Shown piece after piece: positions 10,149 to 48,898 of a DNA stretch of 49,133 nucleotides. The stretch lies in the NCBI GenBank assembly GCA_013416795.1, contig RQSC01000598.1, positions 1 to 49,133 on the forward strand, written 5' to 3'. The stretch comes from Prasinococcaceae sp. CCMP 1430 (lineage: Eukaryota > Plantae > Prasinodermophyta). The position numbers and the translations under genes were made by a program. Numbering within the stretch: position 1 is the first letter of the stretch; each line of letters begins with the position of its first letter. Below the pieces are notes generated by a model. The model was not told the DNA's origin, did no database searches, and saw only the letters and a program-made list of their open reading frames with translations.

Positions 10149-10367
10149 AGCGGGTGGGGAAGCTAGGGCTGGGGACATGTCGTCGTGCTCATTGCATTCG
10201 CTACAACGCCGGACGTGGCCTCGAAGCGCCGCAGCAGGGGGCGAGTGCGCGCGCGCGCAGAACAAACACCGATTCATACAAAATAATTATCGTGCAATGC
10301 ACTTTCCACCCCGTGCCGAACGTCGACGAGAGCGTGCGAGACGTGAGCGTCCCCGAAGGCCTCGGCC

Positions 10368-14479: not shown

Positions 14480-14624
14480 CGCCCGCGTCGGTGTCACCCC
14501 CGCGCGGCTGTGTACGGACTGTACAGTACTTAACTACAATACGGGAGTGTTCCTTACATACATTCAATCAAAATACGAGCCGCGCGCGCGCCGTCGCGCC
14601 TGGCGCCGCCGCGGGTGGCACGCG

Positions 14625-16813: not shown

Positions 16814-17255
16814 CGCCGGACGCAGACCCCCTATCCGGGCGCGCCGCGCGGCACGCCCACTCTCGCTCTCCGTGTGGCCCCTCGCCGCACGCGCTGCCCC
16901 TCCCTCCCTCCCTCCCTTCCCCCCGCCACCTCCACCACCACCCACGCGCGCGCGCACTCAGCGGCCGCCGGCGCCAGGTGCGCCGAGAGCCACTCGTTCG
17001 GCGACGGGGGGAACGGCGCACTCCCGCGCCCACGGCGGGGTTGCGGTTACGATGAGTTCCAAATGAGATTTGATGTATATGGCTGAGTCTCCCGTGGTTA
17101 TATTTGATTCTACATTTTATTGTGTCAATGGACACTTTGGGGCATGGTATGACCGTGGGATTTGGGGTTAATATTGTAGGGTTCGTTGCGCCCTCGGAAC
17201 GCGCGTTTTCGCGCGCGGGGGCGGCCGCGGGCGCGGGCCACACCGCGCGGCGCCG

Positions 17256-18216
17256 NNNNNNNNNNNNNNNNNNNNNNNNNNNNNNNNNNNNNNNNNNNNN
17301 NNNNNNNNNNNNNNNNNNNNNNNNNNNNNNNNNNNNNNNNNNNNNNNNNNNNNNNNNNNNNNNNNNNNNNNNNNNNNNNNNNNNNNNNNNNNNNNNNNNN
17401 NNNNNNNNNNNNNNNNNNNNNNNNNNNNNNNNNNNNNNNNNNNNNNNNNNNNNNNNNNNNNNNNNNNNNNNNNNNNNNNNNNNNNNNNNNNNNNNNNNNN
17501 NNNNNNNNNNNNNNNNNNNNNNNNNNNNNNNNNNNNNNNNNNNNNNNNNNNNNNNNNNNNNNNNNNNNNNNNNNNNNNNNNNNNNNNNNNNNNNNNNNNN
17601 NNNNNNNNNNNNNNNNNNNNNNNNNNNNNNNNNNNNNNNNNNNNNNNNNNNNNNNNNNNNNNNNNNNNNNNNNNNNNNNNNNNNNNNNNNNNNNNNNNNN
17701 NNNNNNNNNNNNNNNNNNNNNNNNNNNNNNNNNNNNNNNNNNNNNNNNNNNNNNNNNNNNNNNNNNNNNNNNNNNNNNNNNNNNNNNNNNNNNNNNNNNN
17801 NNNNNNNNNNNNNNNNNNNNNNNNNNNNNNNNNNNNNNNNNNNNNNNNNNNNNNNNNNNNNNNNNNNNNNNNNNNNNNNNNNNNNNNNNNNNNNNNNNNN
17901 NNNNNNNNNNNNNNNNNNNNNNNNNNNNNNNNNNNNNNNNNNNNNNNNNNNNNNNNNNNNNNNNNNNNNNNNNNNNNNNNNNNNNNNNNNNNNNNNNNNN
18001 NNNNNNNNNNNNNNNNNNNNNNNNNNNNNNNNNNNNNNNNNNNNNNNNNNNNNNNNNNNNNNNNNNNNNNNNNNNNNNNNNNNNNNNNNNNNNNNNNNNN
18101 NNNNNNNNNNNNNNNNNNNNNNNNNNNNNNNNNNNNNNNNNNNNNNNNNNNNNNNNNNNNNNNNNNNNNNNNNNNNNNNNNNNNNNNNNNNNNNNNNNNN
18201 NNNNNNNNNNNNNNNN
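17256..18216. other. Assembly gap; other N runs 33840-34180, 35183-35919, 48800-48898; single-n joins at 21749, 25573, 37624, 47782, 48181
   Basis: Directly visible. Confidence 0.99.
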
Positions 18217-20607
18217 GTGCCCGCCGCGGCGTCGCGCGGAGCGCGTGACGCGCTGCGACTGGGCGAGCTGTGCGCTCGCGCCGAAGCACGGCCGGCGCCG
18301 CGTCGCGCGGCGCGGCAGGTGTTTGCAGGACGCGCGCGCTGGGCCAATGTGGCGCACGCTGCGGTGGCTGACGAAGCGGCCCGCGCCGTCTACTACGTGG
18401 ACGCTGCGCTGGGGTCCGACGATGGCAGCGGATCGCTGGCGTCGCCCTTCCGCACCGTGCAGCGCGGCCTCGATGCCGCGGCCTCCGGTCGCGGCGGCGG
18501 CGAGGTGCGCCTCAGGGCGGGCGTGTACCGCTCGGCCGACGAGCCTGGCGGGCGAGGCGCTGCGCTGGGCGCACGCCACTCGGGCATCACGCTGCGCTCG
18601 ACGCCAGGGGAGCGCGCCACGCTCTCCGGTGCGGCGCCGCTGGGCGAGCTGGCGTGGCGGCGCGCGCCCGTCGGCCGCGCGGGGGCACCTGCGGACGCCG
18701 ATGTGTGGGTCGCACGGCTGGGTGACCGCCGCACGCCGCGCCGCTTCGACGCGCTCCGCGTGGATGGTGCCCGCGCAACGCGCGCGCGCTTTCCCAACTG
18801 CGACCCCGAGCGAACGGTGCCCGACGCGCGGCTGCCCTCTGCGGCCGCGGCTGCATGGGCGCCGCCGCGTGCGGTTGGTGGCGCCTCGTTTGTGTCGGTG
18901 ACGAAGCCGCGGCGGGACAGCGCCACAGCCGGCCTCTTTGCCACGCACGAGGTCGGCGTGGGCGGCGCATGCGGCGTGTACGACCCACCCGTCAGCTACT
19001 GGTGCGCCGCCTCGGCGCAGGGCGGCCTCGCCGCGCCCTTCCAGACGCCTGCGGGGCTGTCCGCCAACGCGAGCGCTCTACCCAACCTGCCGCGCTACAG
19101 GGCTCACGAGGCGCCCGTCTTCAACGTTTGGCGGCCGGCGCGCTGGGCGAACTGGATGTTCGAGGCGCGCGTCGAGGGCCTCGAGATTTCCGACTCCAAT
19201 GAGGCGGCGACGGCCACCTTCAACTTCACGCGCGGCGGCTTTCAGGGAGCTCGCGGCGCGCCCACAGGTGGTGACTGGTTCGTGGAGAACGTGCTCGCGG
19301 AGCTCGACGCGCCGAACGAGTTCTACCTGGACACGCGCACGTCCGAGCTCTACCTGTGGTACAACGGAACGGGAACGTCCCCCGGCTCGCCGCCGCCGGT
19401 GGGCGCGGTCGAGGCGGTGGTGGCCCCCTCGCTGCTGCGATTGGAGGGCACGCGCGCTGCCCCGGTGGCCAACGTGACCATCGCAGAAATTGACTTCGTC
19501 CACGCCGCGCCGACGTACCTGAGCGCGCCCCACGGCGTGCCCTCGGGCGGCGACTGGGCGCTGGAGAGGCAGGCAGCGCTCTTCGCCGAGGGCACTTTTG
19601 GCCTGACCGTCGAGGCGTGCAACTTCAGCCGGCTGGATGGCAACGCGCTGATGCTCAGCGGGTCGCATAGGGCCGCTCGCGTGCGCCGCAACGAGTTCGG
19701 CTGGCTGGGTGGCAGCGCCGTGGCGCTGTGGGGCCGCGCCGAGCTGCTTGACGGCACCGGCGGCGAGCAGCCGTGGGACACGCGCATCGAGGGCAACCTG
19801 TTCCACGAGGTTGGCATCCACGAGAAGCAGTCGGCCTTCGTCTTTCAGGCGCTGGCCGGTCGGAGCACCATTGCTCGCAACGTGGCGTATAACGCGCCGC
19901 GTGCGGGCATCAACCTCAACGATCCCTTCAGTGGCGGCCACCGCGTCGAGGGTAACGTCATCTTCAACACCTGCCGCGAATCAGGCGACCACGGCCCGAT
20001 CAACTCGTGGGATCGGCAGCCTTTCCTGTGGCAGGTGCCCGCCGACTCCGAGAGCGGCGGTGGGGAGGCATCGGCGCCCTCGCTCACTCCTGAGGTGACG
20101 ACCGTGGAGCACAACCTGCTCATCGCCAACTACCAGGCGCAGGGTAACATCGACAACGATGATGGCAGCGCCTTCTACCTCACGCGCTCGAACGTGCTCT
20201 TTCTGGGCGAGGTGGGCCTCAAGTCGGACTGGGGTGGCCACGACAACGCGCACGTCGGTAACATGCACCTGTGGGTGGGCACCTGCGCCGACAGCGGCCC
20301 GCAAGGGCAGCTCGACGGGCACCAGGACGCCTTCGTGGGCAACGTCTGCTTGCTGCGCCCGGGCGGCACGTACGTCGCGGACTACGCCCTCAACTGCAGC
20401 GCGCCGCCCGCGATGCGCATCAGGCTCGCGAACAACACGCTACTCGCGGAGCACGGCAGAGTGGAGGTGTGCGGCATGAGCCTTGCCGCGTGGCGAGCGC
20501 TTGGCAACGATCCGGGCACCACCGTAGCGCGCACGCCGGAGAGCTTCGAGGCGCTCCTCGACAGCGCCGCGCGACTGCTGGGCTCAGGCATGACACAGTG
20601 GTTATGA
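18217..20607 (+). CDS. Right-handed parallel beta-helix (pectin-lyase-like) protein, probable carbohydrate-active enzyme; 5' end lost in N gap
   Basis: YYVDAALGSDDGSGSLASPFRT...VRLRAGVY N-terminal motif, ARFPN, WANWMF, GGFQGARG, WFVENVLAELDAPNEFY, then PbH1-like repeats (GNLFHEVG, RNVAYNAPRAGIN, GNVIFNTCRESGDHGPINSWDRQP, NIDNDDGS). No introns evident. Confidence 0.8.
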   Translation: MPAAASRGARDALRLGELCARAEARPAPRRAARQVFAGRARWANVAHAAVADEAARAVYYVDAALGSDDGSGSLASPFRTVQRGLDAAASGRGGGEVRLRAGVYRSADEPGGRGAALGARHSGITLRSTPGERATLSGAAPLGELAWRRAPVGRAGAPADADVWVARLGDRRTPRRFDALRVDGARATRARFPNCDPERTVPDARLPSAAAAAWAPPRAVGGASFVSVTKPRRDSATAGLFATHEVGVGGACGVYDPPVSYWCAASAQGGLAAPFQTPAGLSANASALPNLPRYRAHEAPVFNVWRPARWANWMFEARVEGLEISDSNEAATATFNFTRGGFQGARGAPTGGDWFVENVLAELDAPNEFYLDTRTSELYLWYNGTGTSPGSPPPVGAVEAVVAPSLLRLEGTRAAPVANVTIAEIDFVHAAPTYLSAPHGVPSGGDWALERQAALFAEGTFGLTVEACNFSRLDGNALMLSGSHRAARVRRNEFGWLGGSAVALWGRAELLDGTGGEQPWDTRIEGNLFHEVGIHEKQSAFVFQALAGRSTIARNVAYNAPRAGINLNDPFSGGHRVEGNVIFNTCRESGDHGPINSWDRQPFLWQVPADSESGGGEASAPSLTPEVTTVEHNLLIANYQAQGNIDNDDGSAFYLTRSNVLFLGEVGLKSDWGGHDNAHVGNMHLWVGTCADSGPQGQLDGHQDAFVGNVCLLRPGGTYVADYALNCSAPPAMRIRLANNTLLAEHGRVEVCGMSLAAWRALGNDPGTTVARTPESFEALLDSAARLLGSGMTQWL

Positions 20608-20857
20608 GGTCGAGCACGTAACAACATGTACAAACCAATGTCTCTCAAGTTGGCATGTGTGCGCGCACACAGCGCGCGCTCTTCTCCTCATCATCCGCTC
20701 TCCGTCGCTTCCTGCGAGGCGTCCGCGCGCGCGCGCATGACGTGCCTCCTCACGGGCGCGGCGGGGGTAGGTCGTTGTCGCCCGTGGTAACGGCCACCGC
20801 CTCGCTGTGCTTTTTTTTTGTTTCCTCTTCCTCGTTGCTCCGCTTCTCCGCGCCCTT

Positions 20858-21617: not shown

Positions 21618-21749
21618 GGAGGAGGTCGCGCCTGCCGCCGTGGCTCTGCGCACGAGCCGGTGCGCTCGCACGCCGGCGTGCGCGTGTGTGTGCGCGTGCG
21701 CGTGCCTGCTCCGCAGCAGCAAGCGCGCGCGCGCCGCCGCGCGCGCCGN

Positions 21750-23720
21750 GCGCACGGAGGCGGAGTCAATGCGCCGGCAGGTGGCGGCGGCGCGGCGCGC
21801 GCGGGCGGCAAGAAGCTTGCCAAGCGGCTCGACGCCATCTATGGCGAGCTCGCCGCGAAGGGCTTCACGGAGGCGCAGATCCGCGCGGCGCTCGAGCGGC
21901 TTGCCGATGCGTACGCAGGCAAGCTACCCACAACGGGCGACGCGCTCGACTGGCTGTGCATGAACGTGCCCGCCCACGAGCTTCCGGCCAAGTTCGCGCG
22001 GTCTGTGCGCGCCTCAGACCTCAGCAACGCCGCCAAGGGCGGCTCAGTGGCCGTCAAGTCCAAGCAGAAGAAGCTCAGCAAGGCCGAGGAGGCCGCGCGG
22101 GCGAAAGAGCAGAAGGCGCGCGACAAGGCGGCGCAGGCCGAGGCTGCCAAGGCGGCGGCTGCCGCGATGCCCGCGCGCGCGGCCAGGCGAGGCGGCGCCT
22201 CGGCAGAGGACGACGCGCAGGCGGCGAGGCGCTGGATCCTGCAGAACTACGACGAGTCGGAGGAAGAGCAGGACGACGTAAGCGAGGGTGAGCTGGATGC
22301 CGGCATCGAGGACTGGCTCGTGTGCGGCGATGCTCGCGAGCGCGAGCGCCGCGCAGCAGAGCGCCGCGAGGCCGCGCGACGCGCGGCGCTGCCGCGTGAC
22401 GAGCACGGCGAGCTCATCGCAAGCGAGTACGCGCGCGCGAAGGAGGCGGCCGTAGCCGCCAAGAAACGCGGCGAGAAGGACGCGCAGAGGGAGGCAGGTA
22501 TGGCGATCAGGGAGCTCAAGGCCGAGGCGGATGCACTCAAATTGACGCAGCAGGAACTTGAACTCGGGCCCAGGGCCGCGGCGAAGGCCCTTGCCGCCGC
22601 GCAGGCTCGTGCAGAGGCGGCCGAGGCGGCGGTGACTGGCGGCGACAGTGACAGCGACGGCAGCGAATTCGTCCTTGAGGATCCGCTCGGGGATGGCGAC
22701 GATGGCGGATTGGAGGACGGTGCCGATGGCGGAGGGGACATCGGTGGCAGTAGCACCACCGGTGGCACAGGCGGGTGTGGGCTCGAGGCAGGCGGCGGTG
22801 CCGAGTGCGAGGCTGCTGCTTCTGGTGCATGCGCTGCTGCGCCCGCCACTGCCGCTGCCCGTGCTGCAGTCTCGAGTGACGAGGATGGCTTCGACCTGGC
22901 GGATGTGTGGGACTCGCTGCCCGATGAGGCGACGCCAAGTCTGGCTCCTGAGCCCGCGGTAGAGCCCGGCCTCGAGATGTGGGGGGACTACTCGCGGGGC
23001 AAACGCTCCAAGCTCAAATCGGACCCGCGGCTGGCCGCCAAAGCAGCGCAGGCTAAGGCGCTTGAGCAGCAGCGCCTCCCAAAGGCCGTCCTACAGGCGC
23101 ACTGCCAGAAACAGGGACTGCCGCCGCCGCGATTCGAGAGGCGCGACGCCGATCTGGCGTTCCCGCAGGCGCTGCGCTACGTCGCGCACGTGGCGGCGCC
23201 GCAGCAGCGTCGCAGGAAGGGGGCGTCGGGCTCAGCGCGCCCCAGTGGGCCCGTGGAGGCGGGTTTGACCTCCGAGGACACAGAATGGCTGCTGTCATCG
23301 CAGACTGCCGCCGGTGGGATAGAGGCGCTGCGCACGGTGCAAGCTGCGCAGAACGCCGCCGCGACCGTGGCTCTCTTCGCTTTGCTGCCCGACCAGCCGC
23401 TCGCACGGACGCTACCGCGACCGTATAGCGAGCTCTGGTCCCGCCTCGAGGCGCGGAGCGCAGAGGAGGCGCAGGCGGCCGCTCGTGGCGAATTCGACAA
23501 GAAGCAGGACTTCATTGACTCGCTCGTGGGCGCTGATGTTGCCCGAACGCGGTCGCACGTCGCCGGGGGGGACCTGGACGCGGCGCTGGGCGACGCGGCG
23601 GCGCGGCGGCTCGTCGTGCATCTCGTCCGCGAGGGGCTGCTGCACGTCGAGCCTGTGGACGAGGAGGACGGCGAGGAATTGCTCGAAGCTGGGGTCCAAG
23701 ACGATGACGACTGGCCGTGA
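21750..23720 (+). CDS. N-terminal module of a DHX29/DExH-box RNA helicase (UBA-like + coiled coil + dsRBD-like) with no helicase core; true start probably hidden at n21749
   Basis: KRLDAIYGELAAKGFTEAQIRAAL...DALDWLCMNVPAHELPAKF, WILQNY, IASEYARAKEAAVAAKKRGEKDAQREAGMAIRELK, LPKAVLQAHCQKQGLPPPRF...AAQNAAATVALFAL match my recollection of plant DHX29-type N-termini. Stop at 23720 comes before any DEAH/P-loop motif. Confidence 0.78.
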   Translation, partial: AHGGGVNAPAGGGGAARAGGKKLAKRLDAIYGELAAKGFTEAQIRAALERLADAYAGKLPTTGDALDWLCMNVPAHELPAKFARSVRASDLSNAAKGGSVAVKSKQKKLSKAEEAARAKEQKARDKAAQAEAAKAAAAAMPARAARRGGASAEDDAQAARRWILQNYDESEEEQDDVSEGELDAGIEDWLVCGDARERERRAAERREAARRAALPRDEHGELIASEYARAKEAAVAAKKRGEKDAQREAGMAIRELKAEADALKLTQQELELGPRAAAKALAAAQARAEAAEAAVTGGDSDSDGSEFVLEDPLGDGDDGGLEDGADGGGDIGGSSTTGGTGGCGLEAGGGAECEAAASGACAAAPATAAARAAVSSDEDGFDLADVWDSLPDEATPSLAPEPAVEPGLEMWGDYSRGKRSKLKSDPRLAAKAAQAKALEQQRLPKAVLQAHCQKQGLPPPRFERRDADLAFPQALRYVAHVAAPQQRRRKGASGSARPSGPVEAGLTSEDTEWLLSSQTAAGGIEALRTVQAAQNAAATVALFALLPDQPLARTLPRPYSELWSRLEARSAEEAQAAARGEFDKKQDFIDSLVGADVARTRSHVAGGDLDAALGDAAARRLVVHLVREGLLHVEPVDEEDGEELLEAGVQDDDDWP

Positions 23721-24124
23721 GCGTGTCGCCGTCTTCGGGGCCAACCCCGTCGGGCTTCGGCGGCCTGAGCGGCGGGTCTCAACCGCCGTCGTCTTTGCCG
23801 AGTCGGACGTCGACGCTACACAGCGACGGAAGCGTCGCGTGGTAGACGCCGTGCGCAGGTCAGACGACCGCAGTGCCCCGCACTCATGCTTGTACTAATA
23901 GTGTACTAGTGGACGTGTGTGTATATAGAAAAGTGCGGGACGTCTTGTTTACACTACAACGTTGCACACATCATACATCAGTGAGGGAGCCTTGCCGCGC
24001 CATGGCGCTCCCTCTTGGACTCGATATTGCCAGCGCAAGAGCGCTCCTCACGCCACCGTCAGTCGAGCTCGCTTCCAGTGGTCTAGAGAACTCTCGGCGT
24101 GTGCGCTATTTGGCCTCAGGTCGT

Positions 24125-24726
24125 CTACTTCGCCTCCGGCGCCGGGGCAGGGCCCAGGTGGCTGTCCAGCAGCTTGCGGCGCGCCTCGGGCGCCGGGGCA
24201 GGGCCCAGGTGGCTGTCCAGCAGCTTGCGGCGCGCCTCGGGCGCCGGGGCAGGGCCCAGGTGGCTGTCCAGCAGCTTGCGGCGCGCCTCGGGCGCCGGGG
24301 CAGGGGATAGGTCCTTCAGGAGCAGCTTGCGGCGCGCCTCGGGCGCCGGGGCAGGGGACAGGTCCTTCAGGAGTAGCTTGCGGCGCGCCTCGGGCGCCGG
24401 GGCAGGGCCCAGGTGGCTGTCCAGCAGCTTGCGGCGCGCCTCGGGCGCCGGGGCAGGGCCCAGGTGGCTGTCCAGCAGCTTGCGGGCGTTGACCGTCTCT
24501 GCACGAGCATGGCATCGTCAACACAGCCACGGCGCGAGATACGTGTCAGCGAGTGGCGGCAAGCCAAGCAGCGCACATGTGAGCACGCCCCGCCTGCAGT
24601 GTGTCTGAGGGAATGCTATCACCAGGCGCCGAGCCATGCGCGCGCGCGCGCCCACGCACCGACCGCGCAGGCCGCCAGCGCCAGCAGCGCGAGCGCGAGG
24701 GCGAGGAGCGTCGTCGGGCGCCGCAT
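24125..24726 (-). CDS. Secreted multi-peptide precursor / AGP-like polyprotein, 146 aa: signal peptide + 7 Pro-rich peptides separated by (R)RKLL; exons 24726-24660 and 24498-24125
   Basis: Exon 1 = MRRPTTLLALALALLALAACAV+G, donor GTGCGT at 24659, acceptor GTGCAG at 24499. The spliced ORF is 441 nt and ends GAG GCG AAG TAG. Same-type repeat copies differ only at synonymous sites in this frame. Absent from the ORF track because exon 2 has no start codon. Confidence 0.85.
24137..24486. repeat. 51-bp tandem repeat, 7 units, two variants (order A-A-B-B-A-A-A on the coding minus strand)
   Basis: The (G/C)GGCGCCGGGGCAGG unit start recurs at 24137, 24188, 24239, 24290, 24341, 24392 and 24443. Confidence 0.97.
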
Positions 24727-24751
24727 CCTGGCGGCGTGGCTGGTGCCGTGC

Positions 24752-25348
24752 CGGCAAGCTCTTCCTCACGGTGGCTACGTACAAGTCGCCGGTGCACTTC
24801 CATCCCATCGACGGCGTCGGCGTCGCGCCAGACATCAAGTGCACGGTGACGCCCAGGCGCGTGATGGCGCTTGCGCAGTAGTCCGCTTCGCTCTGACGGC
24901 GTGCGAGCGCGCGCGCGCGTCGCGCGGGTTTCGAGCAGTCGTGCTGACACTCGAAGCTTCCTCTCGGCGCCCCGTCCTCCTTCCCATGCCATGCTCTACT
25001 GCAACGCAGGGAGACGCTACCTGCGGCAGCCGCGCGTGCGGCGGCGCTGGCGCCGCCCACCATGGATCACATCGCGCGGGCCATGCGTGGGGGGGAGAAT
25101 GGCACCGCCCGCAAGCTCACGCGCGGGACGGGCCTCGCCGCGGAGGTGCTGGCCGACTCGTGCGTGCTCAAGGCAGAAGAGACGTGCGTCGCGCGGCTTC
25201 GCCCAGCCCTTGCGTGCGTTCTCGGTGCCCCGCGCGTCCGCGCGCCTGCAAGTGCGCGGGCTGACACGGATCCGCGCGCGACATTCGCAGGCTCGTGGGC
25301 AAGATGGACGCTGAGACGGCGGGGGTGACTAGTAGCCGCGACGTCTGA
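24752..25348 (+). CDS. ctpA: 3' exons of a carboxyl-terminal processing peptidase (CtpA, S41A; CTPA1-like); 5' exons including the catalytic residues absent
   Basis: GKLFLTVATYKSPVHFHPIDGVGVAPDIKC resembles the S41A TxAxYxxP...IDxxGVxPD motif, and EVLADSCVLKAEE resembles the CTPA1 tail. Exons ~24752-24856, 25010-25183 and 25291-25348 are joined by a GC-AG intron and a GT-AG intron that keep the frame to TGA. Confidence 0.72.
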
Positions 25349-25394: not shown

Positions 25395-25572
25395 TTAGAA
25401 AAGGCTGCCCTGCACGTCCACCTCGTTGGCCCAAATGTCCTCGTAATTCTGCCTCTTGCGGATCACGTGCAGCGTCTTGTCTCCGCCCACCATGACCTCG
25501 GCCGCCTCGGGGAAGGAGTTGTAGTTCTTCGTGGACATGCCAGCGCAGTAGGCGCCGGAGCCCTCCATGACG
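25395..25572 (-). CDS. lysA: C-terminal fragment of diaminopimelate decarboxylase (LysA-like, group IV PLP decarboxylase); remainder lost at n25573
   Basis: [50 protein letters not shown] matches the GAY..SM..NYN..P..AEV.V....IR.R..Y.D motif of LysA. Confidence 0.82.
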
Positions 25573-28210: not shown

Positions 28211-28630
28211 GGTGGCCCACGCCTGCGTCCGTCTGAACGGGCACGCCGGCTCTGCCGCGCGCGCGCCGCTTCGGTTTCGTCGGATCCTCCGCTCGAAACC
28301 CTTCCCAAACCGAATCCGTCGAATCGAATGCACCTCAGAATGGCTTCTCGACGGCCCGAAGCCGCGGGGCGCGCGCCCCCGGCGCGTGCCCAGAAACGGT
28401 CCCCTGGGATTAAGGTTTTGTTTAGGGGTCAATATTTTCAGGGTTAAAATTGCGTTCCCGGCCGTTGGAAGAGCCTGCGTGCGCAGCGCATCCCTCCACA
28501 TTTGAGGTCAAAATATGTAGGGTCTATTTTATCCCCATGTTTGACTCAATTTGACGTCTGGTTGCTGGAAAGTGAGAGGGTTGAGGTTGGGGTTGGGGCG
28601 CGGGCGTGCGCTGCCAGGGAAGCCGCCGCG

Positions 28631-31404: not shown

Positions 31405-32387
31405 CCGCGGGGTCGCCCCGCGAGTCGCGCCCCAGCTTGTCCACCTCGTCGAGCAGCAGCACCGGATCGCACACGCCCGCGCGCCGCACCGCCTGCAGGA
31501 TCCGCCCCGGCATCGCGCCGACGTACGTGCGCCGGTGCCCCCGCACCTCCGCCTCGTCGTGCACGCCGCCCAGCGCGATGCGCTGGAACTCGCGCCCCAG
31601 CGCGGCGGCGACGCTGCGCGCCAGCGACGTCTTGCCCACGCCGGGGGGGCCGAGAAGGCACAGGATGGGGCCCGGCGCGTCCGCGCGGATCTTGCGCACC
31701 GCCAGGTACTCCACCACGCGCCGCTTCACGTCCTCCAGGCCGTAGTGCTCCGCGTCGAGGATCGCGCGCGCCGCGGACAGCGACTCGGCCGGCTCGGGCG
31801 GCAGCGGCGGCGCAACGACGGCCTCAGCCACCGCACCGCCCACAGCGCCCGCTCCCCCCACGCCGCCCGCCGCGCCCGCGCCTGCGCCAGATCCGCCGTC
31901 GGGGGCGGCGCCCTTGCCGCCGTCGTTGCTCTGGGCGGCGGCGAGGCGCCTCGCGCGCCTCTCCTGCGAGGTGAGCCCCCACGGCAGCTCGGCCATCCAC
32001 TCGAGGTACGTGCGGCTGGCGCCGTACCCCGGCGCCTGCGGCGGCGTGCGCTTGAGGCGGCGCAGCTCCCTGCGCGCCGCCGCGCGCGCCTCGCGCGGCG
32101 CCTTCACGAGGGCGGCGTCGAGCGCGCGCTCGAGGGGGGCGAGCTCGTCGTCGTCGTCGCCCTCACCGCCCCCCTCACCGAGCTCGTCCCTGATGGCCTT
32201 GAGCTGCTGGCGGAGCACGTACTCCTTCTGCGACTTGGTGACGCTGTCCTCTACCTTGCGCTGGATGCCCGCCGACACCTTGTGTGCGCGCGTGCGCGCG
32301 CGCGCGCGGGTGAGCGCGCGTGTGAGCGCGCGTGCGCGTGCGCGTGCGCAACATGCGCGCGCGCACGTGCGTGCGTGCGTGCGCACG

Positions 32388-32430
<43 letters not shown>

Positions 32431-32989
32431 GCGTACCTCGATCGCCGCCAGCGAGCGCTCGACCAGCTCGGTGGCAAGGTGCACGCGGCGCCTTGGGTCG
32501 GCGCACTCGAGCACCGCCAGGCGCTCCTCAGAGCTCGCGTCGAGGCTGGCGGAGAAGATGTCCACGACCTGCGAGGGCGCGCCGGCGTCGAGCACCGCCG
32601 CGATGGCGCGCTGCGTGAAGGCGCCCACGCGCCCGCGAAGGCCGCGCAGCAGCGCGCGCGCGCCGGTGCGCAGCCGCTCGCACGCCTGCGAGTACGCGTG
32701 GTCGCCGTCGAGCTTCGTCGCGTCCGCGCGCGTCTCGATGGGCGCCACCGCGCCCCAGAAGTACCCCTCACCGCCCCCATCAACGCCCCCCCCTGCGCCT
32801 CCTTCCCCGCCTCCCCCCCTCCGCTCGACGTCGCCGCTCACGCGGAAGCGGCCGTAGGGCAGGCCCTCGACGAGCACGGTGAGCCCGCCGCTGCCCGAGC
32901 GGTAGAGGCGCACGACGCGCGCGGCGCAGCCCGCGCGCCCACGCAGGTCGCCCGCAGTGACGTCGGGTGTGTCGGCGTCCGCGCCCTTC

Positions 32990-33333: not shown

Positions 33334-34289
33334 GAGGCCGCGGATGGCAAGCCCGCGCGAGGCGTGCTCACCCGCTGGGTCGCCACGTCACCGCCACGCG
33401 ACGCTGGCCGCGCAGCGCAACGACGGCCGGGCGCGCCCCGCGCCCCGCCGCAAATTCGAATTCGAAAAGAGCAAACCGCGGCTTTCCTCCGGTACACATA
33501 TCCTATAGACATGTGATAAATAATAAACGTGAATAATTTAGAGAGGAAATACGCACGCATTACGTAAGTTCATGCGGTTTCAGGTTCGATTGCGGTGCAT
33601 TCCATGCGTGGCGCGGAGCGGTTGGTTAGGGTTGTGCAGTATTTTGGGTTTGAGGGTTTGGGAGGGTCTAGGGTCCGATGCTGGCGCCCGCTGGCGCCCG
33701 TCGGCGGCAGCGCGGCGCGGCGAGGCAGCGACCCAAGGGGGGTCGCGAGGGAGCGCGAGCCCGAGCCCGAGCCCGTGCCGGGCCTTGGCAGGGGGGTCCA
33801 GCCTGACGACCTGACGGAGGGGTCGCCGTCGGCTGCCGCNNNNNNNNNNNNNNNNNNNNNNNNNNNNNNNNNNNNNNNNNNNNNNNNNNNNNNNNNNNNN
33901 NNNNNNNNNNNNNNNNNNNNNNNNNNNNNNNNNNNNNNNNNNNNNNNNNNNNNNNNNNNNNNNNNNNNNNNNNNNNNNNNNNNNNNNNNNNNNNNNNNNN
34001 NNNNNNNNNNNNNNNNNNNNNNNNNNNNNNNNNNNNNNNNNNNNNNNNNNNNNNNNNNNNNNNNNNNNNNNNNNNNNNNNNNNNNNNNNNNNNNNNNNNN
34101 NNNNNNNNNNNNNNNNNNNNNNNNNNNNNNNNNNNNNNNNNNNNNNNNNNNNNNNNNNNNNNNNNNNNNNNNNNNNNNNCCAGGTGGACCCGCCTCGCCT
34201 CCGCCTCGCCTCGCGGCGCCGCGCCGATCGGGCCCGCGCGGCCGCGGCAAACGCGGAAGCTGCTGCCGCGTACTCAGCATCCGGCTTTT

Positions 34290-35112: not shown

Positions 35113-37170
35113 ATGGCGAGCGAAGCGGCGATGCTGCGCCCGGCGCACGCGCACGCGGCGCTGGGCGCGGCGGCGCACCTGGNNNNNNNNNNNNNNNNNN
35201 NNNNNNNNNNNNNNNNNNNNNNNNNNNNNNNNNNNNNNNNNNNNNNNNNNNNNNNNNNNNNNNNNNNNNNNNNNNNNNNNNNNNNNNNNNNNNNNNNNNN
35301 NNNNNNNNNNNNNNNNNNNNNNNNNNNNNNNNNNNNNNNNNNNNNNNNNNNNNNNNNNNNNNNNNNNNNNNNNNNNNNNNNNNNNNNNNNNNNNNNNNNN
35401 NNNNNNNNNNNNNNNNNNNNNNNNNNNNNNNNNNNNNNNNNNNNNNNNNNNNNNNNNNNNNNNNNNNNNNNNNNNNNNNNNNNNNNNNNNNNNNNNNNNN
35501 NNNNNNNNNNNNNNNNNNNNNNNNNNNNNNNNNNNNNNNNNNNNNNNNNNNNNNNNNNNNNNNNNNNNNNNNNNNNNNNNNNNNNNNNNNNNNNNNNNNN
35601 NNNNNNNNNNNNNNNNNNNNNNNNNNNNNNNNNNNNNNNNNNNNNNNNNNNNNNNNNNNNNNNNNNNNNNNNNNNNNNNNNNNNNNNNNNNNNNNNNNNN
35701 NNNNNNNNNNNNNNNNNNNNNNNNNNNNNNNNNNNNNNNNNNNNNNNNNNNNNNNNNNNNNNNNNNNNNNNNNNNNNNNNNNNNNNNNNNNNNNNNNNNN
35801 NNNNNNNNNNNNNNNNNNNNNNNNNNNNNNNNNNNNNNNNNNNNNNNNNNNNNNNNNNNNNNNNNNNNNNNNNNNNNNNNNNNNNNNNNNNNNNNNNNNN
35901 NNNNNNNNNNNNNNNNNNNTGCACGTCCTTCGACGCGCTTGCGATCCCTTGCCCGCCTAGGGGGGGGAAGGAGGAGGGGTTGAAGGGTTGTCGTCGGGAC
36001 GGCGCGCGCGAGCCGGAGGGGGAAGGGTGTGGCGCGCGCGGCGGGGCGCGGACTGGCCGGCGCCGCCCGCGGACTGTTTTCTTTTCGCGTTCGCTGACGC
36101 GGCGGCGCGCACCCCGCTGCCCATGCCAACCCCCCTCCCTGCCCTCTTTCGCGCAGGACGGCGCCGATGCGAGCTCGCCCGGGCGCGAGTGCTACCTGGT
36201 GCCCGAGCTCCCGGGCTCGCTGCAGGCGCTGGACGGGAGCTTCAACGCTGGCGGCGAGTGCGACCTGCTGCTCGAGGGCTTCAGCGTGAGCAAGTCGCTC
36301 GCGCTGCCGAGCGACGATGACGCGGGATGCCCGAGCGTCTGCGATTCCGAGGCGGAGTCGGTGCCGGAGTCTGACGACGAGACGGACGCCGCTGACGACT
36401 CGGACGACGAGGCCATGAGCGTCGAAGATTCGCTCGCGCTGATCACCGGCCCCGCTGGCCCAGGCACGGTCCCCGTGCTGAGCGCCGGCGCCGCGCCGCC
36501 GGGCGATGACGCGCGGGCGGAGGAGGAGGCGGAGGCGCAGCGCGCGCACACACAGCAGCTGGAGGATGGCCTGGGCCGCGCGCCGTCGCCGCGCGCGCTG
36601 GCGTCGCTGCGACCGCGCGTGCGCGCGCCGAGGGCCTTCGAGGAGGCCTTCGAGGAGGCCGAGTCGTTCAAGCCGCGCACGCCGCCGCACCAGCAGCCCA
36701 GCGGCCCGCTCTCCGCCGACAGCGAGAGCGAGAAGCAGGACAAAGAGGACGGCGGGAACGAGGGCGAGGACGAGGACGGAGGGGGGCACGAGGTGGAGGC
36801 TCAAGCTCGCGGCGCCCCGAAGAAGAGCCGCAGCGGCCGGAGGAAGACGGCCGCCGAGAAGGCCGCCATCTCTGCGGCGCTCGCGCGGGCGTCGCGCAAC
36901 GGGCCGCTGTCGGCAGCGCAGGTGCGCGCCGTGACGGCGCGCGCAGTGGGCGGCCGCGGCGGCCGCGCGGCCGCGCGTGCGCCTGTGCGCAAGAAGATCG
37001 CGAAGGCGGGCGGAAAGGGGAGCAAGTCCTGCAAGCGCGGCTGCTCGTATTGCGGCGCTACATCCACGCCGCAGTGGCGGCACCACCCCAAGACGAACGA
37101 GCTGCTCTGCAACGCATGCGGCGTGAGGCTGAAGAAGACCGGCACCCTCAAGCTCGCCAGCGCCTGCTAA
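35113..37170 (+). CDS. GATA zinc-finger transcription factor (C-X2-C-X18-C-X2-C at the C-terminus); 5' part interrupted by N gap
   Basis: CSYCGATSTPQWRHHPKTNELLCNACGVRLKK. The last exon probably starts after CGCAG at 36156. Candidate ATG 35113 lies before the gap. Confidence 0.85.
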   Translation: MASEAAMLRPAHAHAALGAAAHLXXXXXXXXXXXXXXXXXXXXXXXXXXXXXXXXXXXXXXXXXXXXXXXXXXXXXXXXXXXXXXXXXXXXXXXXXXXXXXXXXXXXXXXXXXXXXXXXXXXXXXXXXXXXXXXXXXXXXXXXXXXXXXXXXXXXXXXXXXXXXXXXXXXXXXXXXXXXXXXXXXXXXXXXXXXXXXXXXXXXXXXXXXXXXXXXXXXXXXXXXXXXXXXXXXXXXXXXXXXXXXXXXXXXXXXXXXXXXXXXXXXXXXCTSFDALAIPCPPRGGKEEGLKGCRRDGAREPEGEGCGARGGARTGRRRPRTVFFSRSLTRRRAPRCPCQPPSLPSFAQDGADASSPGRECYLVPELPGSLQALDGSFNAGGECDLLLEGFSVSKSLALPSDDDAGCPSVCDSEAESVPESDDETDAADDSDDEAMSVEDSLALITGPAGPGTVPVLSAGAAPPGDDARAEEEAEAQRAHTQQLEDGLGRAPSPRALASLRPRVRAPRAFEEAFEEAESFKPRTPPHQQPSGPLSADSESEKQDKEDGGNEGEDEDGGGHEVEAQARGAPKKSRSGRRKTAAEKAAISAALARASRNGPLSAAQVRAVTARAVGGRGGRAAARAPVRKKIAKAGGKGSKSCKRGCSYCGATSTPQWRHHPKTNELLCNACGVRLKKTGTLKLASAC

Positions 37171-48711: not shown

Positions 48712-48799
<88 letters not shown>

Positions 48800-48898
48800 N
48801 NNNNNNNNNNNNNNNNNNNNNNNNNNNNNNNNNNNNNNNNNNNNNNNNNNNNNNNNNNNNNNNNNNNNNNNNNNNNNNNNNNNNNNNNNNNNNNNNNN

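What the first reader, a model, noticed from the sequence alone, without database searches (positions are those of the whole stretch)
24125..24726. Hidden multi-peptide secreted precursor: signal peptide + 7 Pro-rich peptides separated by (R)RKLL (candidate algal peptide-signal or glycopeptide system)
Seen: the 51-bp repeat read on the minus strand, in a frame the ORF track misses, splices via a canonical GTGCGT...GTGCAG intron (24659-24499) to a hydrophobic first exon. Product: MRRPTTLLALALALLALAACAVETVNA-RKLL-DSHLGPAPAPEA-RRKLL-DSHLGPAPAPEA-RRKLL-LKDLSPAPAPEA-RRKLL-LKDLSPAPAPEA-RRKLL-DSHLGPAPAPEA-RRKLL-DSHLGPAPAPEA-RRKLL-DSHLGPAPAPEA-K* (146 aa). Known: R-x-L-x/RRxL is the site-1 protease (SKI-1/SBT6.1) motif used on plant precursors such as RALF; RRK is a kexin/furin-type basic site; Ala-Pro-Ala-Pro is an arabinogalactan-type hydroxyproline glycomodule; land plants make several Hyp-glycopeptides from one precursor (HypSys). 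Inference: the gene yields seven 12-17-residue, probably Hyp-glycosylated, secreted peptides of two types. This would be a plant-style polyprotein peptide system in an early-diverging green alga. Alternative: a processed AGP-like wall or adhesive component.
Basis: partly seen in the sequence, partly recalled or inferred. Interest (0 to 1): 0.92.

Follow-up and report, generated by a model that had tools for sequence, protein, structure and literature searches.

The report
Unannotated secreted seven-repeat peptide precursor
A small, unannotated two-exon gene in a GC-rich marine green alga (probably Prasinoderma coloniale) appears to encode a secreted protein made of seven short proline-rich units, each bounded by the protease-type motif RKLL. 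It is a plausible but untested multi-peptide precursor.

Summary
A 51-bp x7 tandem repeat lies at 24131-24485. On the minus strand it joins, through a 161-nt GT..AG intron, to an ATG exon encoding a signal-peptide-like segment, giving 146 aa.

Sequence evidence favours a real gene:
- The proposed frame is the only coding-like frame of six (0.41 bits/codon; real genes 0.28-0.59).
- The three substitutions between same-type units are silent.
- The ATG exon has the most hydrophobic start of 778 open ATG starts in the window.
- The intron resembles a verified Lon protease intron.

No transcript evidence could be obtained. No protein containing this repeat was found in about 15 billion public proteins, so it appears unannotated and orphan.

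RKLL occurs seven times: once 6 residues after the likely signal cleavage, then at every unit boundary. It fits the R-x-hydrophobic-L subtilase/S1P site. RKLL is the putative processing motif of plant PME17. The layout most resembles diatom silaffin Sil1p (seven units, RRIL/RRNL removed). It shows no kinship to plant peptide families.

Hyp-glycosylation and signalling remain speculation. My own added idea: cleavage after RKLL would expose Asp-Ser-His, a copper-binding ATCUN N-terminus.

The neighbourhood holds gene fragments, so rearrangement or misassembly is not excluded. The same stretch was noted twice by first readers of this scan.

The parts
24660..24726 (-). Exon 1: ATG (A at -3) plus 22 codons. 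It has an MRRP n-region and a 15-residue Leu/Ala h-region. A-C-A precedes the likely signal-peptidase site at residue 21/22.
   Evidence: It has the most hydrophobic 14-residue stretch of 778 open ATG starts in the window. It is one of 2/992 ATGs passing a crude SP filter. Codon LLR is +0.23/codon.
24499..24659 (-). Intron of 161 nt, phase 1. The donor is G|GTGCGTGGGCGCG, there are CTGAC and TTGAC branch-like sites, and the acceptor is GTGCAG|AG.
   Evidence: No frame is coding-like and GC is flat across codon positions. The donor, branch and acceptor closely resemble the Lon protease intron at about 30541-30408 (GAG|GTGAGTGGGCGCGG ... CTGACTGAC ... GCGCAG|A), which is verified by the conserved AMTGE|ITLQG junction.
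24125..24498 (-). Exon 2: ETVNA, RKLL, then seven 12-residue Pro-rich units separated by RRKLL, then K and a TAG stop (24127-24125).
   Evidence: Codon LLR is +0.41/codon, the best of six frames and within the range of real genes. GC1/2/3 is 0.85/0.56/0.93 against a reference of 0.75/0.55/0.84. An unsupervised codon scan picks it out at 52 bits.
24131..24485 (.). 51-bp x7 tandem repeat (17 codons per unit), unit order A-A-B-B-A-A-A.
   Evidence: TRF, the repeat finder D1 and the codon-aligned units. The three within-type substitutions all fall at codon position 3 and are silent. They are silent only in this frame and its antisense partner.
24473..24484 (-). First RKLL tetrad (residues 28-31), 6 residues after the likely signal-peptidase site. 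Six further RKLL tetrads follow at 51-nt steps: 24422-24433, 24371-24382, 24320-24331, 24269-24280, 24218-24229 and 24167-24178.
   Evidence: RKLL at residues 28, 45, 62, 79, 96, 113, 130; exact DNA copies at the five A-type units. That these are protease sites is inferred, not shown.
23861..24000 (.). AT-rich dip (GC 0.41), 125-265 nt downstream of the stop. It is the probable 3'-3' intergenic spacer shared with the convergent DHX29-like gene.
   Evidence: Similar dips lie just after the stops of the aldo-keto reductase, PCFS4-like and beta-helix genes. The TGTAA at 23953 is not a general signal in this window and is not counted as evidence.
21660..23720 (+). Flank: DHX29-like N-terminal ORF (UBA_DHX29 and DSRM_DHX29) with no helicase core. 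The ORF end coincides with a possible GTGAGC donor.
   Evidence: Pfam and sequence. No helicase domain was found in the other ORFs scanned.
24750..24878 (+). Flank: a 43-codon coding-like remnant resembling the C-terminal end of an S41/CtpA peptidase. It lies antisense in the presumed 5' flank of the peptide gene.
   Evidence: Codon LLR is 21.6 bits. The only NCBIfam hits are two S41 models, at E 0.05-0.07, and the CtpA match lies near that model's C-terminus (350-384 of 401). Pfam and PDB searches were blank.

Best explanation
This is a real but unannotated two-exon nuclear gene. Its product enters the secretory pathway through a cleavable signal peptide. It is a pro-protein that a subtilisin-family endoprotease cuts after each of seven RKLL tetrads (S1P/SBT type: Arg at P4, Leu at P2 and P1).

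Cutting would remove a 10-residue N-terminal propeptide and release seven short Pro-rich peptides. Five would be DSHLGPAPAPEA-type and two LKDLSPAPAPEA-type, each at first carrying a C-terminal RRKLL that may be trimmed.

Shown directly: the sequence, the frame, the coding-like composition, the silent substitutions, and the signal-like exon with a canonical intron. Inferred: transcription, splicing, secretion, cleavage, and everything about what the peptides do.
For: Gene model:
- Searches give the structure.
- The proposed frame is the only coding-like frame, at 0.41 bits/codon against 0.28-0.59 for six Pfam-supported genes, and the intron is non-coding-like.
- The three within-type changes are all silent.
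- The N-terminus ranks 1/778 for hydrophobicity and is 1 of 2/992 SP-like ATGs. An SP-like start lying by chance within 300 nt upstream on the same strand is therefore roughly a 0.5% event.
- The intron signals match a verified local intron.
- An AT-rich spacer typical of gene ends lies downstream.

Processing:
- RKLL is the one invariant tetrad at all seven boundaries, including right after the signal peptide.
- RKLL is annotated as the putative basic processing motif of AtPME17, which SBT3.5 processes at a single motif (PMC7694680).
- Diatom Sil1p has a signal peptide, an RXL motif just after it, and seven units whose C-terminal RRIL/RRNL are absent from the mature peptides (PMC4557024).
- AlphaFold gives only local helices and no global fold (pTM 0.19), which fits beads on a string.
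- One EukProt protein, P0027, has a hydrophobic stretch followed by five units of RRML-DAHTVDAPPESG, the same grammar.
Against: - There is no transcript, proteomic or comparative support.
- No protein with this repeat was found among the public collections searched. Either annotators did not call it or it is not expressed.
- The repeat units are nearly identical, so the effective coding evidence is about 17 codons. A single unit's score (6.3 bits) is reached by about 8% of presumed non-coding 51-nt windows.
- The three silent changes are few.
- AlphaFold places RRKLL inside predicted helices, not loops.
- No S1P-like enzyme was examined in this genome.
- B-type units show that the peptide core is not conserved, whereas the spacer is.
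- The locus sits among gene fragments, so the region may be rearranged or misassembled.
Confidence: 0.4

Rival explanations
1. This is a real secreted protein that stays intact. It would be a small, basic (pI about 10.3), Pro/Ala/Leu-rich repeat protein of the cell wall or colony matrix, possibly Hyp-glycosylated on the APAP modules. The RRKLL-containing segments would form short amphipathic helices that mediate binding, not cleavage.
For: - The gene-model evidence is the same as for the best explanation.
- AlphaFold predicts seven helices of 10-12 residues over the PEARRKLLDSHL segments, joined by GPAPAP linkers.
- APAP is a non-contiguous-Pro module of the AGP type (established knowledge; not tested here).
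- A bacterial protein, P0005, has the same 17-residue period and an LLxxHLGxxPxPxxA pattern without any secretory-processing context.
Against: - PAST is 40.8%, below the usual 50% for classical AGPs. There is no GPI-type tail, no Cys or Tyr for cross-linking, and no N-glycan sequon.
- pTM is 0.19, so no fold is predicted.
- An RKLL placed 6 residues after the signal cleavage site is hard to explain structurally. It is typical of pro-peptide removal, as with the Sil1p RXL.
Confidence: 0.25
2. This is not a functional gene. It would be a young minisatellite in a rearranged, gene-fragment-rich or misassembled stretch, whose open frame and upstream Leu/Ala-rich ATG segment arise from GC-rich low-complexity sequence. 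Alternatively it is a decaying or never-expressed proto-gene.
For: - Four of six frames are open across the repeat.
- A single unit's coding score is reached by about 8% of non-coding windows.
- It is absent from all public protein sets searched.
- The flanks are a DHX29-like ORF without its helicase half and isolated S41-like and other coding-like remnants.
- The window is a gapped draft with N runs.
Against: Independent features converge on one frame and strand:
- the best codon score of six frames;
- silent-only substitutions;
- the top-ranked signal-like ATG exon 228 nt upstream;
- a canonical phase-compatible intron like a verified one;
- a period that is a multiple of three;
- a stop codon followed by a typical AT-rich gene-end spacer.

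Tandem-repeat masking before gene prediction is a common reason for such genes being missed (inference).
Confidence: 0.2
3. One reading: the seven peptides are Hyp-O-glycosylated extracellular signalling peptides, a plant-style polyprotein hormone system already present in an early-diverging green alga.
For: - The architecture.
- The RKLL tetrad is annotated as the putative processing motif in plant PME17.
- Peptidergic signalling with convertase-processed precursors exists in Chlamydomonas (PMC6919629, PMC6313938).
Against: - There is no similarity to CLE, CEP, RALF, PSK or HypSys.
- There is no evidence for prolyl hydroxylation or glycosyltransferases acting here.
- No receptor candidate is known.
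- The variable part is the peptide N-terminus, while the invariant part includes the spacer.
- The gene is an orphan, so there is no evolutionary link to land-plant systems.
Confidence: 0.08

Closest known systems
Diatom silaffin precursor Sil1p (Cylindrotheca fusiformis) and other RXL-processed diatom wall proteins
   Same: - A signal peptide.
- An RXL motif shortly after it.
- Seven tandem repeat units, each ending in a basic-plus-Leu tetrad (RRIL/RRNL) that is absent from the mature peptides (PMC4557024).
- Here RKL(L) follows the signal peptide, and six of the seven units end in RRKLL.
   Different: - Silaffin units are Lys/Ser-rich and heavily modified for silica deposition. These units are Pro/Ala-rich with no Lys clusters.
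- The lineage differs (stramenopile against green alga), and there is no silica biology.
- There is no sequence homology.
Plant subtilase (S1P/SBT6.1, SBT3.5) substrates: type-I pectin methylesterases (RRLL/RKLL) and RALF (RRxL)
   Same: The identical tetrad RKLL is annotated as the putative basic processing motif of AtPME17, which SBT3.5 processes at a single motif (PMC7694680). The general rule is Arg at P4 and a hydrophobic residue at P2 (established knowledge).
   Different: Those substrates have one or two sites that release a folded domain or a single peptide. They are not a seven-fold polyprotein. There is no PME, PMEI or RALF domain here.
Fungal KEX2-processed repeat proteins (KEPs; alpha-factor, Rep1 and others)
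   Same: A signal peptide plus tandem, nearly identical short peptides separated by basic protease sites. They are released outside the cell and are mostly lineage-specific orphans (PMC6339444, PMC7329392).
   Different: The KEP site is dibasic KR/RR, cut by kexin. Here the invariant motif is RKLL, with RR preceding it in six of seven sites. The organism is not a fungus, and there is no homology.
Chlamydomonas prepropeptides processed by subtilisin-like prohormone convertases and amidated by PAM
   Same: They are green-algal secreted peptide precursors with basic cleavage sites (PMC6919629, PMC6313938).
   Different: Amidated peptides need Gly before the basic site. This protein has none (0 G-[RK][RK]). 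Those precursors are not seven-fold tandem repeats.
ATCUN (Xaa-Zaa-His) copper/nickel-binding N-termini: histatin-1 (Asp-Ser-His), serum albumin (Asp-Ala-His)
   Same: If cleavage falls exactly after RKLL, five peptides would begin Asp-Ser-His. This is the same tripeptide as histatin-1, which binds Cu(II) with a femtomolar Kd (PMC8277166). The look-alike P0027 would begin Asp-Ala-His.
   Different: The free N-terminus is hypothetical. The two B-type units lack His at position 3. No polyprotein source of ATCUN peptides is known to me.

Membership tests
Fungal KEX2-processed repeat proteins (KEPs) | N-terminal signal peptide | tested here: met
   The n/h/c regions are present, with A-x-A at residues 19-21, and the start ranks 1/778 for hydrophobicity. 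No SignalP run was available.
Fungal KEX2-processed repeat proteins (KEPs) | At least 3 near-identical short peptides separated by dibasic KR/RR kexin sites | tested here: inconclusive
   There are seven units. RR precedes KLL at six boundaries, but the first boundary has only A-R-K-L-L. The invariant motif is RKLL, not KR/RR.
Fungal KEX2-processed repeat proteins (KEPs) | Fungal origin / homology to a KEP family | tested here: not met
   The genomic context is a GC-rich green alga, and there are no homologues.
Diatom silaffin-type RXL-processed precursors | Signal peptide followed by RXL, and repeat units ending in RXL-type motifs that are removed | tested here: inconclusive
   The sequence pattern is met: RKL after the signal peptide and at every boundary. 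Removal cannot be tested in silico.
Diatom silaffin-type RXL-processed precursors | Lys/Ser-rich units (KxxK) modified with polyamines and phosphate; silica association | tested here: not met
   The units are Pro/Ala/Leu-rich. Each B-type core has one Lys and A-type cores have none; the other Lys residues lie in the spacers and at the C-terminus. There are no KxxK clusters.
Plant secreted peptide families (CLE, CEP, RALF, PSK, HypSys) | Family-specific conserved peptide domain | tested here: not met
   Pfam gives only a sub-threshold hit to a viral family (UL21a, 18.8 bits against a cut-off of 27) and no plant peptide family. NCBIfam gives only sub-threshold chance hits. In the 1.84-billion representative search, 93 of the 150 listed hits matched my NUMOD3-like motif filter, and none of those I read resembled these families.
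Arabinogalactan proteins / AG peptides | PAST >= 50% (classical), or a short AG-peptide with dominant A/S/T-Pro dipeptides | tested here: not met
   PAST is 40.8% and Pro 16.8% in the mature protein. AP/PA dipeptides are confined to the PAPAP of each unit.
Arabinogalactan proteins / AG peptides | C-terminal GPI-anchor signal (most classical AGPs and AG peptides) | tested here: not met
   The C-terminus is ...PAPAPEAK, with no hydrophobic tail.
Arabinogalactan proteins / AG peptides | Prolyl hydroxylation and Hyp-O-glycosylation | not testable with these tools
   This needs mass spectrometry or Yariv binding.
S1P/SBT-type subtilase substrates | R-x-(hydrophobic)-(L/T/K/F) tetrad in a secretory-pathway protein | tested here: met
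   RKLL occurs seven times, after a signal peptide. The same tetrad is annotated as the putative processing motif in AtPME17.
S1P/SBT-type subtilase substrates | Actual cleavage by a cognate subtilase present in the organism | not tested
   Other first-stage notes mention subtilases in this genome. I did not check them, and no S1P orthologue was identified.
ATCUN metal-binding peptides | Free N-terminal Xaa-Zaa-His with Zaa not Pro | not testable with these tools
   Asp-Ser-His follows RKLL in five of the seven units. Whether it becomes a free N-terminus depends on the exact cleavage position.
PAM-dependent amidated propeptides (Chlamydomonas type) | Gly immediately before the basic cleavage site | tested here: not met
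   There are 0 G-[RK][RK] motifs.

The most novel reading that the evidence does not exclude
The gene is a polyprotein factory for extracellular metal-binding peptides. S1P-type cleavage exactly after RKLL would free five peptides with an Asp-Ser-His N-terminus. This is the ATCUN tripeptide of histatin-1, which has femtomolar Cu(II) affinity. A marine picoalga would thereby gain a genetically encoded, secreted copper (or nickel) ligand for detoxification or acquisition. The only look-alike found, EukProt protein P0027, has RRML followed by Asp-Ala-His, the albumin ATCUN, repeated five times. That hints at a wider, unrecognised class of repeat precursors in protists.
Probability: 0.07. Interest if true: 0.85.

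Novelty: new variant of a known kind. Interest (0 to 1): 0.5.

Why it matters
If the gene is expressed and processed, it would be a tandem polyprotein peptide precursor in Prasinodermophyta, the lineage that diverged before the Chlorophyta/Streptophyta split. It would show that basic-hydrophobic (RxLL) subtilase processing of repeat precursors occurs in the green lineage outside land plants. Such processing is known separately from diatom silaffins and plant PMEs/RALFs.

It would give concrete peptides to synthesise and test. The ATCUN reading would link a gene to the long-standing question of which molecules make up the strong copper-binding ligands that marine phytoplankton release.

It also illustrates that short tandem-repeat secreted genes may escape annotation. 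No protein with this repeat was found in about 15 billion public sequences. All of this currently rests on sequence inference alone.

Tried and rejected
**Homology**
- The search for homologous proteins with exon 2 (123 aa, candidates of 68-215 aa) and with its first 42 aa (candidates of 23-73 aa) were both blank.
- The full HMMER search of 1.84 billion representatives gave 255 hits. Of the 150 listed, 93 matched a NUMOD3-like homing-endonuclease motif filter (SPETRRKLSEAHKGK type). The rest I read looked like unrelated repeat proteins. I rejected these as periodicity and low-complexity matches.
- P0005 has the same 17-residue period but is bacterial, lying next to a ParE/Phd toxin-antitoxin pair. 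I rejected it as kin.
- P0027 could not be placed. It has no contig on record and its species is unknown.

**DNA scans**
- A scan for the start of exon 2 in JGI metagenomes was blank.
- Scans for the back-translated motif in metagenome, viral and prokaryotic genome collections were all blank. None of these collections holds algal genomes, so the blanks say nothing about algal relatives.

**Locating the annotated reference locus**
- Exact look-up of three likely single-exon neighbours (TPR protein, aldo-keto reductase, PCFS4-like) found none on record.
- A search with the DHX29-like ORF was also blank within its length band.

**Other checks**
- TGTAA as a poly(A) signal: it is present 172 nt after the stop but absent downstream of seven other genes in the window, so I dropped it as evidence.
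- Mobile-element hypothesis for the 1.2-kb block: there are no terminal repeats or duplications beyond GC-rich simple sequence.
- Rfam gave nothing relevant.
- The 23-nt inverted similarity 24477-24499 / 25095-25117 is at chance level by my estimate.
- The AlphaFold model had too low a pTM to justify a fold search.
All searches used exon 2 by reference.
Full report
**1. What is there**

The window is about 70% GC with several N runs, so it is a gapped draft. TRF finds a single array at 24131-24485: period 51, 7.0 copies, 93% matches.

- Exon 1 is 24726-24660 (67 nt). It has an ATG with A at -3.
- The intron is 24659-24499 (161 nt), GTGCGT...GTGCAG, phase 1.
- Exon 2 is 24498-24125 and ends in TAG.

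The spliced CDS is 441 nt and gives 146 aa. The protein has a hydrophobic N-terminus, then ETVNA, then RKLL. Seven 12-residue units follow in the order A-A-B-B-A-A-A, separated by RRKLL, with a final K.

Without splicing the ATG frame stops after about 35 codons. The repeat frame has an upstream in-frame TGA and no ATG.

**2. Is it a gene?**

I built a codon log-likelihood table from six Pfam-supported ORFs in the window: Lon protease (two ORF segments), aldo-keto reductase, a TPR protein, a DHX29-like protein and a PCFS4-like protein.

- *Codon usage.* The proposed exon 2 frame scores +0.41 bits/codon. The reference genes score 0.28-0.59. The other five frames score +0.08 to -0.49. GC at codon positions 1/2/3 is 0.85/0.56/0.93, against a reference of 0.75/0.55/0.84. 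The intron has no positive frame and flat GC.
- *Unsupervised scan.* A scan of all stop-to-stop frames picks out 24128-24499 (-) at 52 bits.
- *Caveat on repeats.* The array repeats 17 codons, so I scored a single unit. Its 6.3 bits is reached by about 8% of 51-nt windows from presumed non-coding stretches. This line of evidence alone is therefore modest.
- *Substitutions.* The three substitutions between same-type units all fall on third codon positions and are silent. They would change the protein in four of the other five frames.
- *Signal-like exon.* Only 2 of 992 ATGs on both strands pass a crude signal-peptide filter, and this is one of them. It has the most hydrophobic 14-residue stretch of all 778 ATG starts with at least 22 open codons. 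By my estimate, such a start lying by chance within 300 nt upstream on the right strand is about a 0.5% event.
- *Intron signals.* The donor is G|GTGCGTGGGCGCG. CTGAC and TTGAC are branch-like sites, and the acceptor is GTGCAG|AG. These closely match the Lon intron, GAG|GTGAGTGGGCGCGG ... CTGACTGAC ... GCGCAG|A. The conserved AMTGE|ITLQG junction verifies that intron.
- *Gene end.* An AT-rich dip (GC 0.41) at 23861-24000 follows the stop. Similar dips follow the stops of three other genes.

Taken together I put about 0.8 on a genuine protein-coding unit.

The missing piece is expression. The tools gave no access to the alga's RNA-seq. No protein containing this repeat was found in the 5.8-billion-cluster or 1.84-billion-representative libraries, and two metagenome scans were blank. 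Masking of tandem repeats before gene prediction, and collapse of 51-bp repeats in short-read transcript assemblies, could explain the absence. That is inference.

**3. Organism and neighbourhood**

Earlier notes of this scan name Prasinoderma coloniale. The window's GC matches the published 69.8% (PMC7455551). I did not verify identity further.

The gene lies convergent to a DHX29-like ORF at 21660-23720 (+). That ORF has UBA_DHX29 and DSRM_DHX29 domains but no helicase core. No helicase domain was found in any other ORF I scanned. The ORF end coincides with a possible GTGAGC donor.

In the presumed 5' flank, on the opposite strand, lies a 43-codon coding-like piece at 24750-24878. Its only family hits are S41/CtpA peptidases, at E of about 0.05, and the CtpA match lies near that model's C-terminus. 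Another orphan 55-codon coding-like piece lies at 25407-25571 (-).

So 23.7-26.6 kb is unusually fragmentary for a compact genome, as another first-stage note (s1-400127) also remarked. No transposon-like repeats bound the block. Rearrangement or misassembly cannot be excluded, and this is the main reason for keeping 0.2 on the "not functional / artefact" rival.

**4. How it most likely works**

The n-, h- and c-regions, with A-C-A at residues 19-21, predict signal cleavage after residue 21. This rests on the -3/-1 rule applied by hand, because no SignalP run was available.

RKLL then occurs at residues 28, 45, 62, 79, 96, 113 and 130. One copy lies 6 residues after the signal cleavage site and one at each unit boundary. 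RKLL is the invariant tetrad. The extra Arg is absent at the first site.

R-K-L-L fits the S1P/subtilase rule of Arg at P4, a hydrophobic residue at P2 and Leu at P1 (established knowledge). The same tetrad is annotated as the putative basic processing motif of Arabidopsis PME17, which SBT3.5 processes at a single motif (PMC7694680).

The closest architectural precedent is diatom Sil1p. It has a signal peptide, an RXL motif just behind it, and seven units whose C-terminal RRIL/RRNL are missing from the mature silaffins (PMC4557024). Fungal KEX2-processed repeat proteins (PMC6339444, PMC7329392) and the Chlamydomonas prepropeptides (PMC6919629, PMC6313938) show that such precursors are widespread, including in a green alga.

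AlphaFold without an alignment gives seven local helices over PEARRKLLDSHL and no global fold (pTM 0.19). That is compatible with a string of peptides. It is equally compatible with an intact flexible repeat protein.

I commit to "secreted pro-protein cut at RKLL" at 0.4, and to "intact secreted repeat protein" at 0.25.

**5. What the peptides might do**

- PAST is 40.8%.
- There is no GPI tail.
- There is no Gly for amidation.
- There is no Cys or Tyr.

No plant peptide family is matched.

*An alternative lead.* Cleavage exactly after RKLL would expose Asp-Ser-His at the N-terminus of the five A-type peptides. Xaa-Zaa-His with a free amine is the ATCUN Cu(II)/Ni(II) site. Asp-Ser-His is the histatin-1 version, with a Kd of about 2 fM, and Asp-Ala-His is the albumin version (PMC8277166).

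The only non-trivial look-alike among the 150 listed hits from 1.84 billion representatives is P0027 (EukProt, species unknown). It has a hydrophobic stretch followed by five copies of RRML-DAHTVDAPPESG. BLASTP aligns it unit by unit on R-[RK]-x-L-D-[SA]-H ... AP-PE-[SA].

This similarity is suggestive but weak. The units are short, and repeats inflate the E-value. P0027 was found through that very similarity. The B-type units also lack His at position 3. I give the ATCUN reading about 0.07.

**6. Novelty and score**

The kind of system is known: a secreted tandem-repeat precursor with recurrent protease sites. This would be a new variant. It uses an RKLL (S1P-type) spacer with Pro-rich units, it is an orphan gene, and it sits in the earliest-diverging green lineage.

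The gene model is well supported in silico, but expression, secretion, cleavage and function are all untested.

Noticed in passing
window 21660-23720 (+): A DHX29-like ORF carries only the N-terminal UBA and DSRM-like domains. The ORF ends at a possible GTGAGC donor, and no helicase core was found in the other ORFs scanned. It is either a truncated gene or an assembly break.
   Followed up: partly
window 24750-24878 (+): An isolated 43-codon coding-like remnant resembles the C-terminal end of an S41/CtpA peptidase (NCBIfam E about 0.05, two S41 models). No upstream S41 exons were seen. It overlaps the presumed promoter of the peptide gene on the other strand.
   Followed up: partly
window 25407-25571 (-): A strongly coding-like 55-codon fragment (45.6 bits) has no Pfam match and abuts a single N at 25572. 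The surrounding 24.9-26.5 kb has no other clear exons, which is odd for a compact genome.
   Followed up: partly
window, 80-nt GC dips (e.g. 10261-10340, 14501-14600, 20581-20660, 23861-24000, 28381-28600): Short AT-rich dips (GC 0.41-0.49 in a 70% GC genome) coincide with gene ends and intergenic spacers. They could serve as a simple gene-boundary marker in this genome. TGTAA is not a general 3' signal here.
   Followed up: partly
window 32290-32440 (-), Lon protease intron: The intron between the Lon substrate-binding and AAA exons is almost entirely (CGCA)n/(CG)n microsatellite. It has a GTACGC donor and an unusual CACAAG acceptor.
   Followed up: no
P0027 (EukProt 'gene7222-329_t', 200 aa): A protist protein of unknown species has a hydrophobic stretch followed by five 16-residue units, RRML-DAHTVDAPPESG. 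This is the same 'basic-Leu spacer, then Asp-x-His, then Pro-rich, then acidic' grammar as the window's gene. The gene model looks mis-terminated, with read-through at the C-terminus.
   Followed up: partly
P0005 (JGI metagenome 3300010883, 168 aa): A bacterial tail-anchored protein lies next to a ParE/Phd toxin-antitoxin pair. It has a 17-residue repeat, LLxxHLGxxPxPxxA, with the same period and several of the same positions as the algal units. This is probably convergence.
   Followed up: partly
window 17255-18216, 33839-34179, 35182-35919, 48799-48898 and single Ns at 21748, 25572, 37623, 47781, 48180: N runs and isolated Ns show the window is a gapped or ambiguous draft. The apparent low-GC islands in the composition profile are artefacts of these Ns.
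   Followed up: yes
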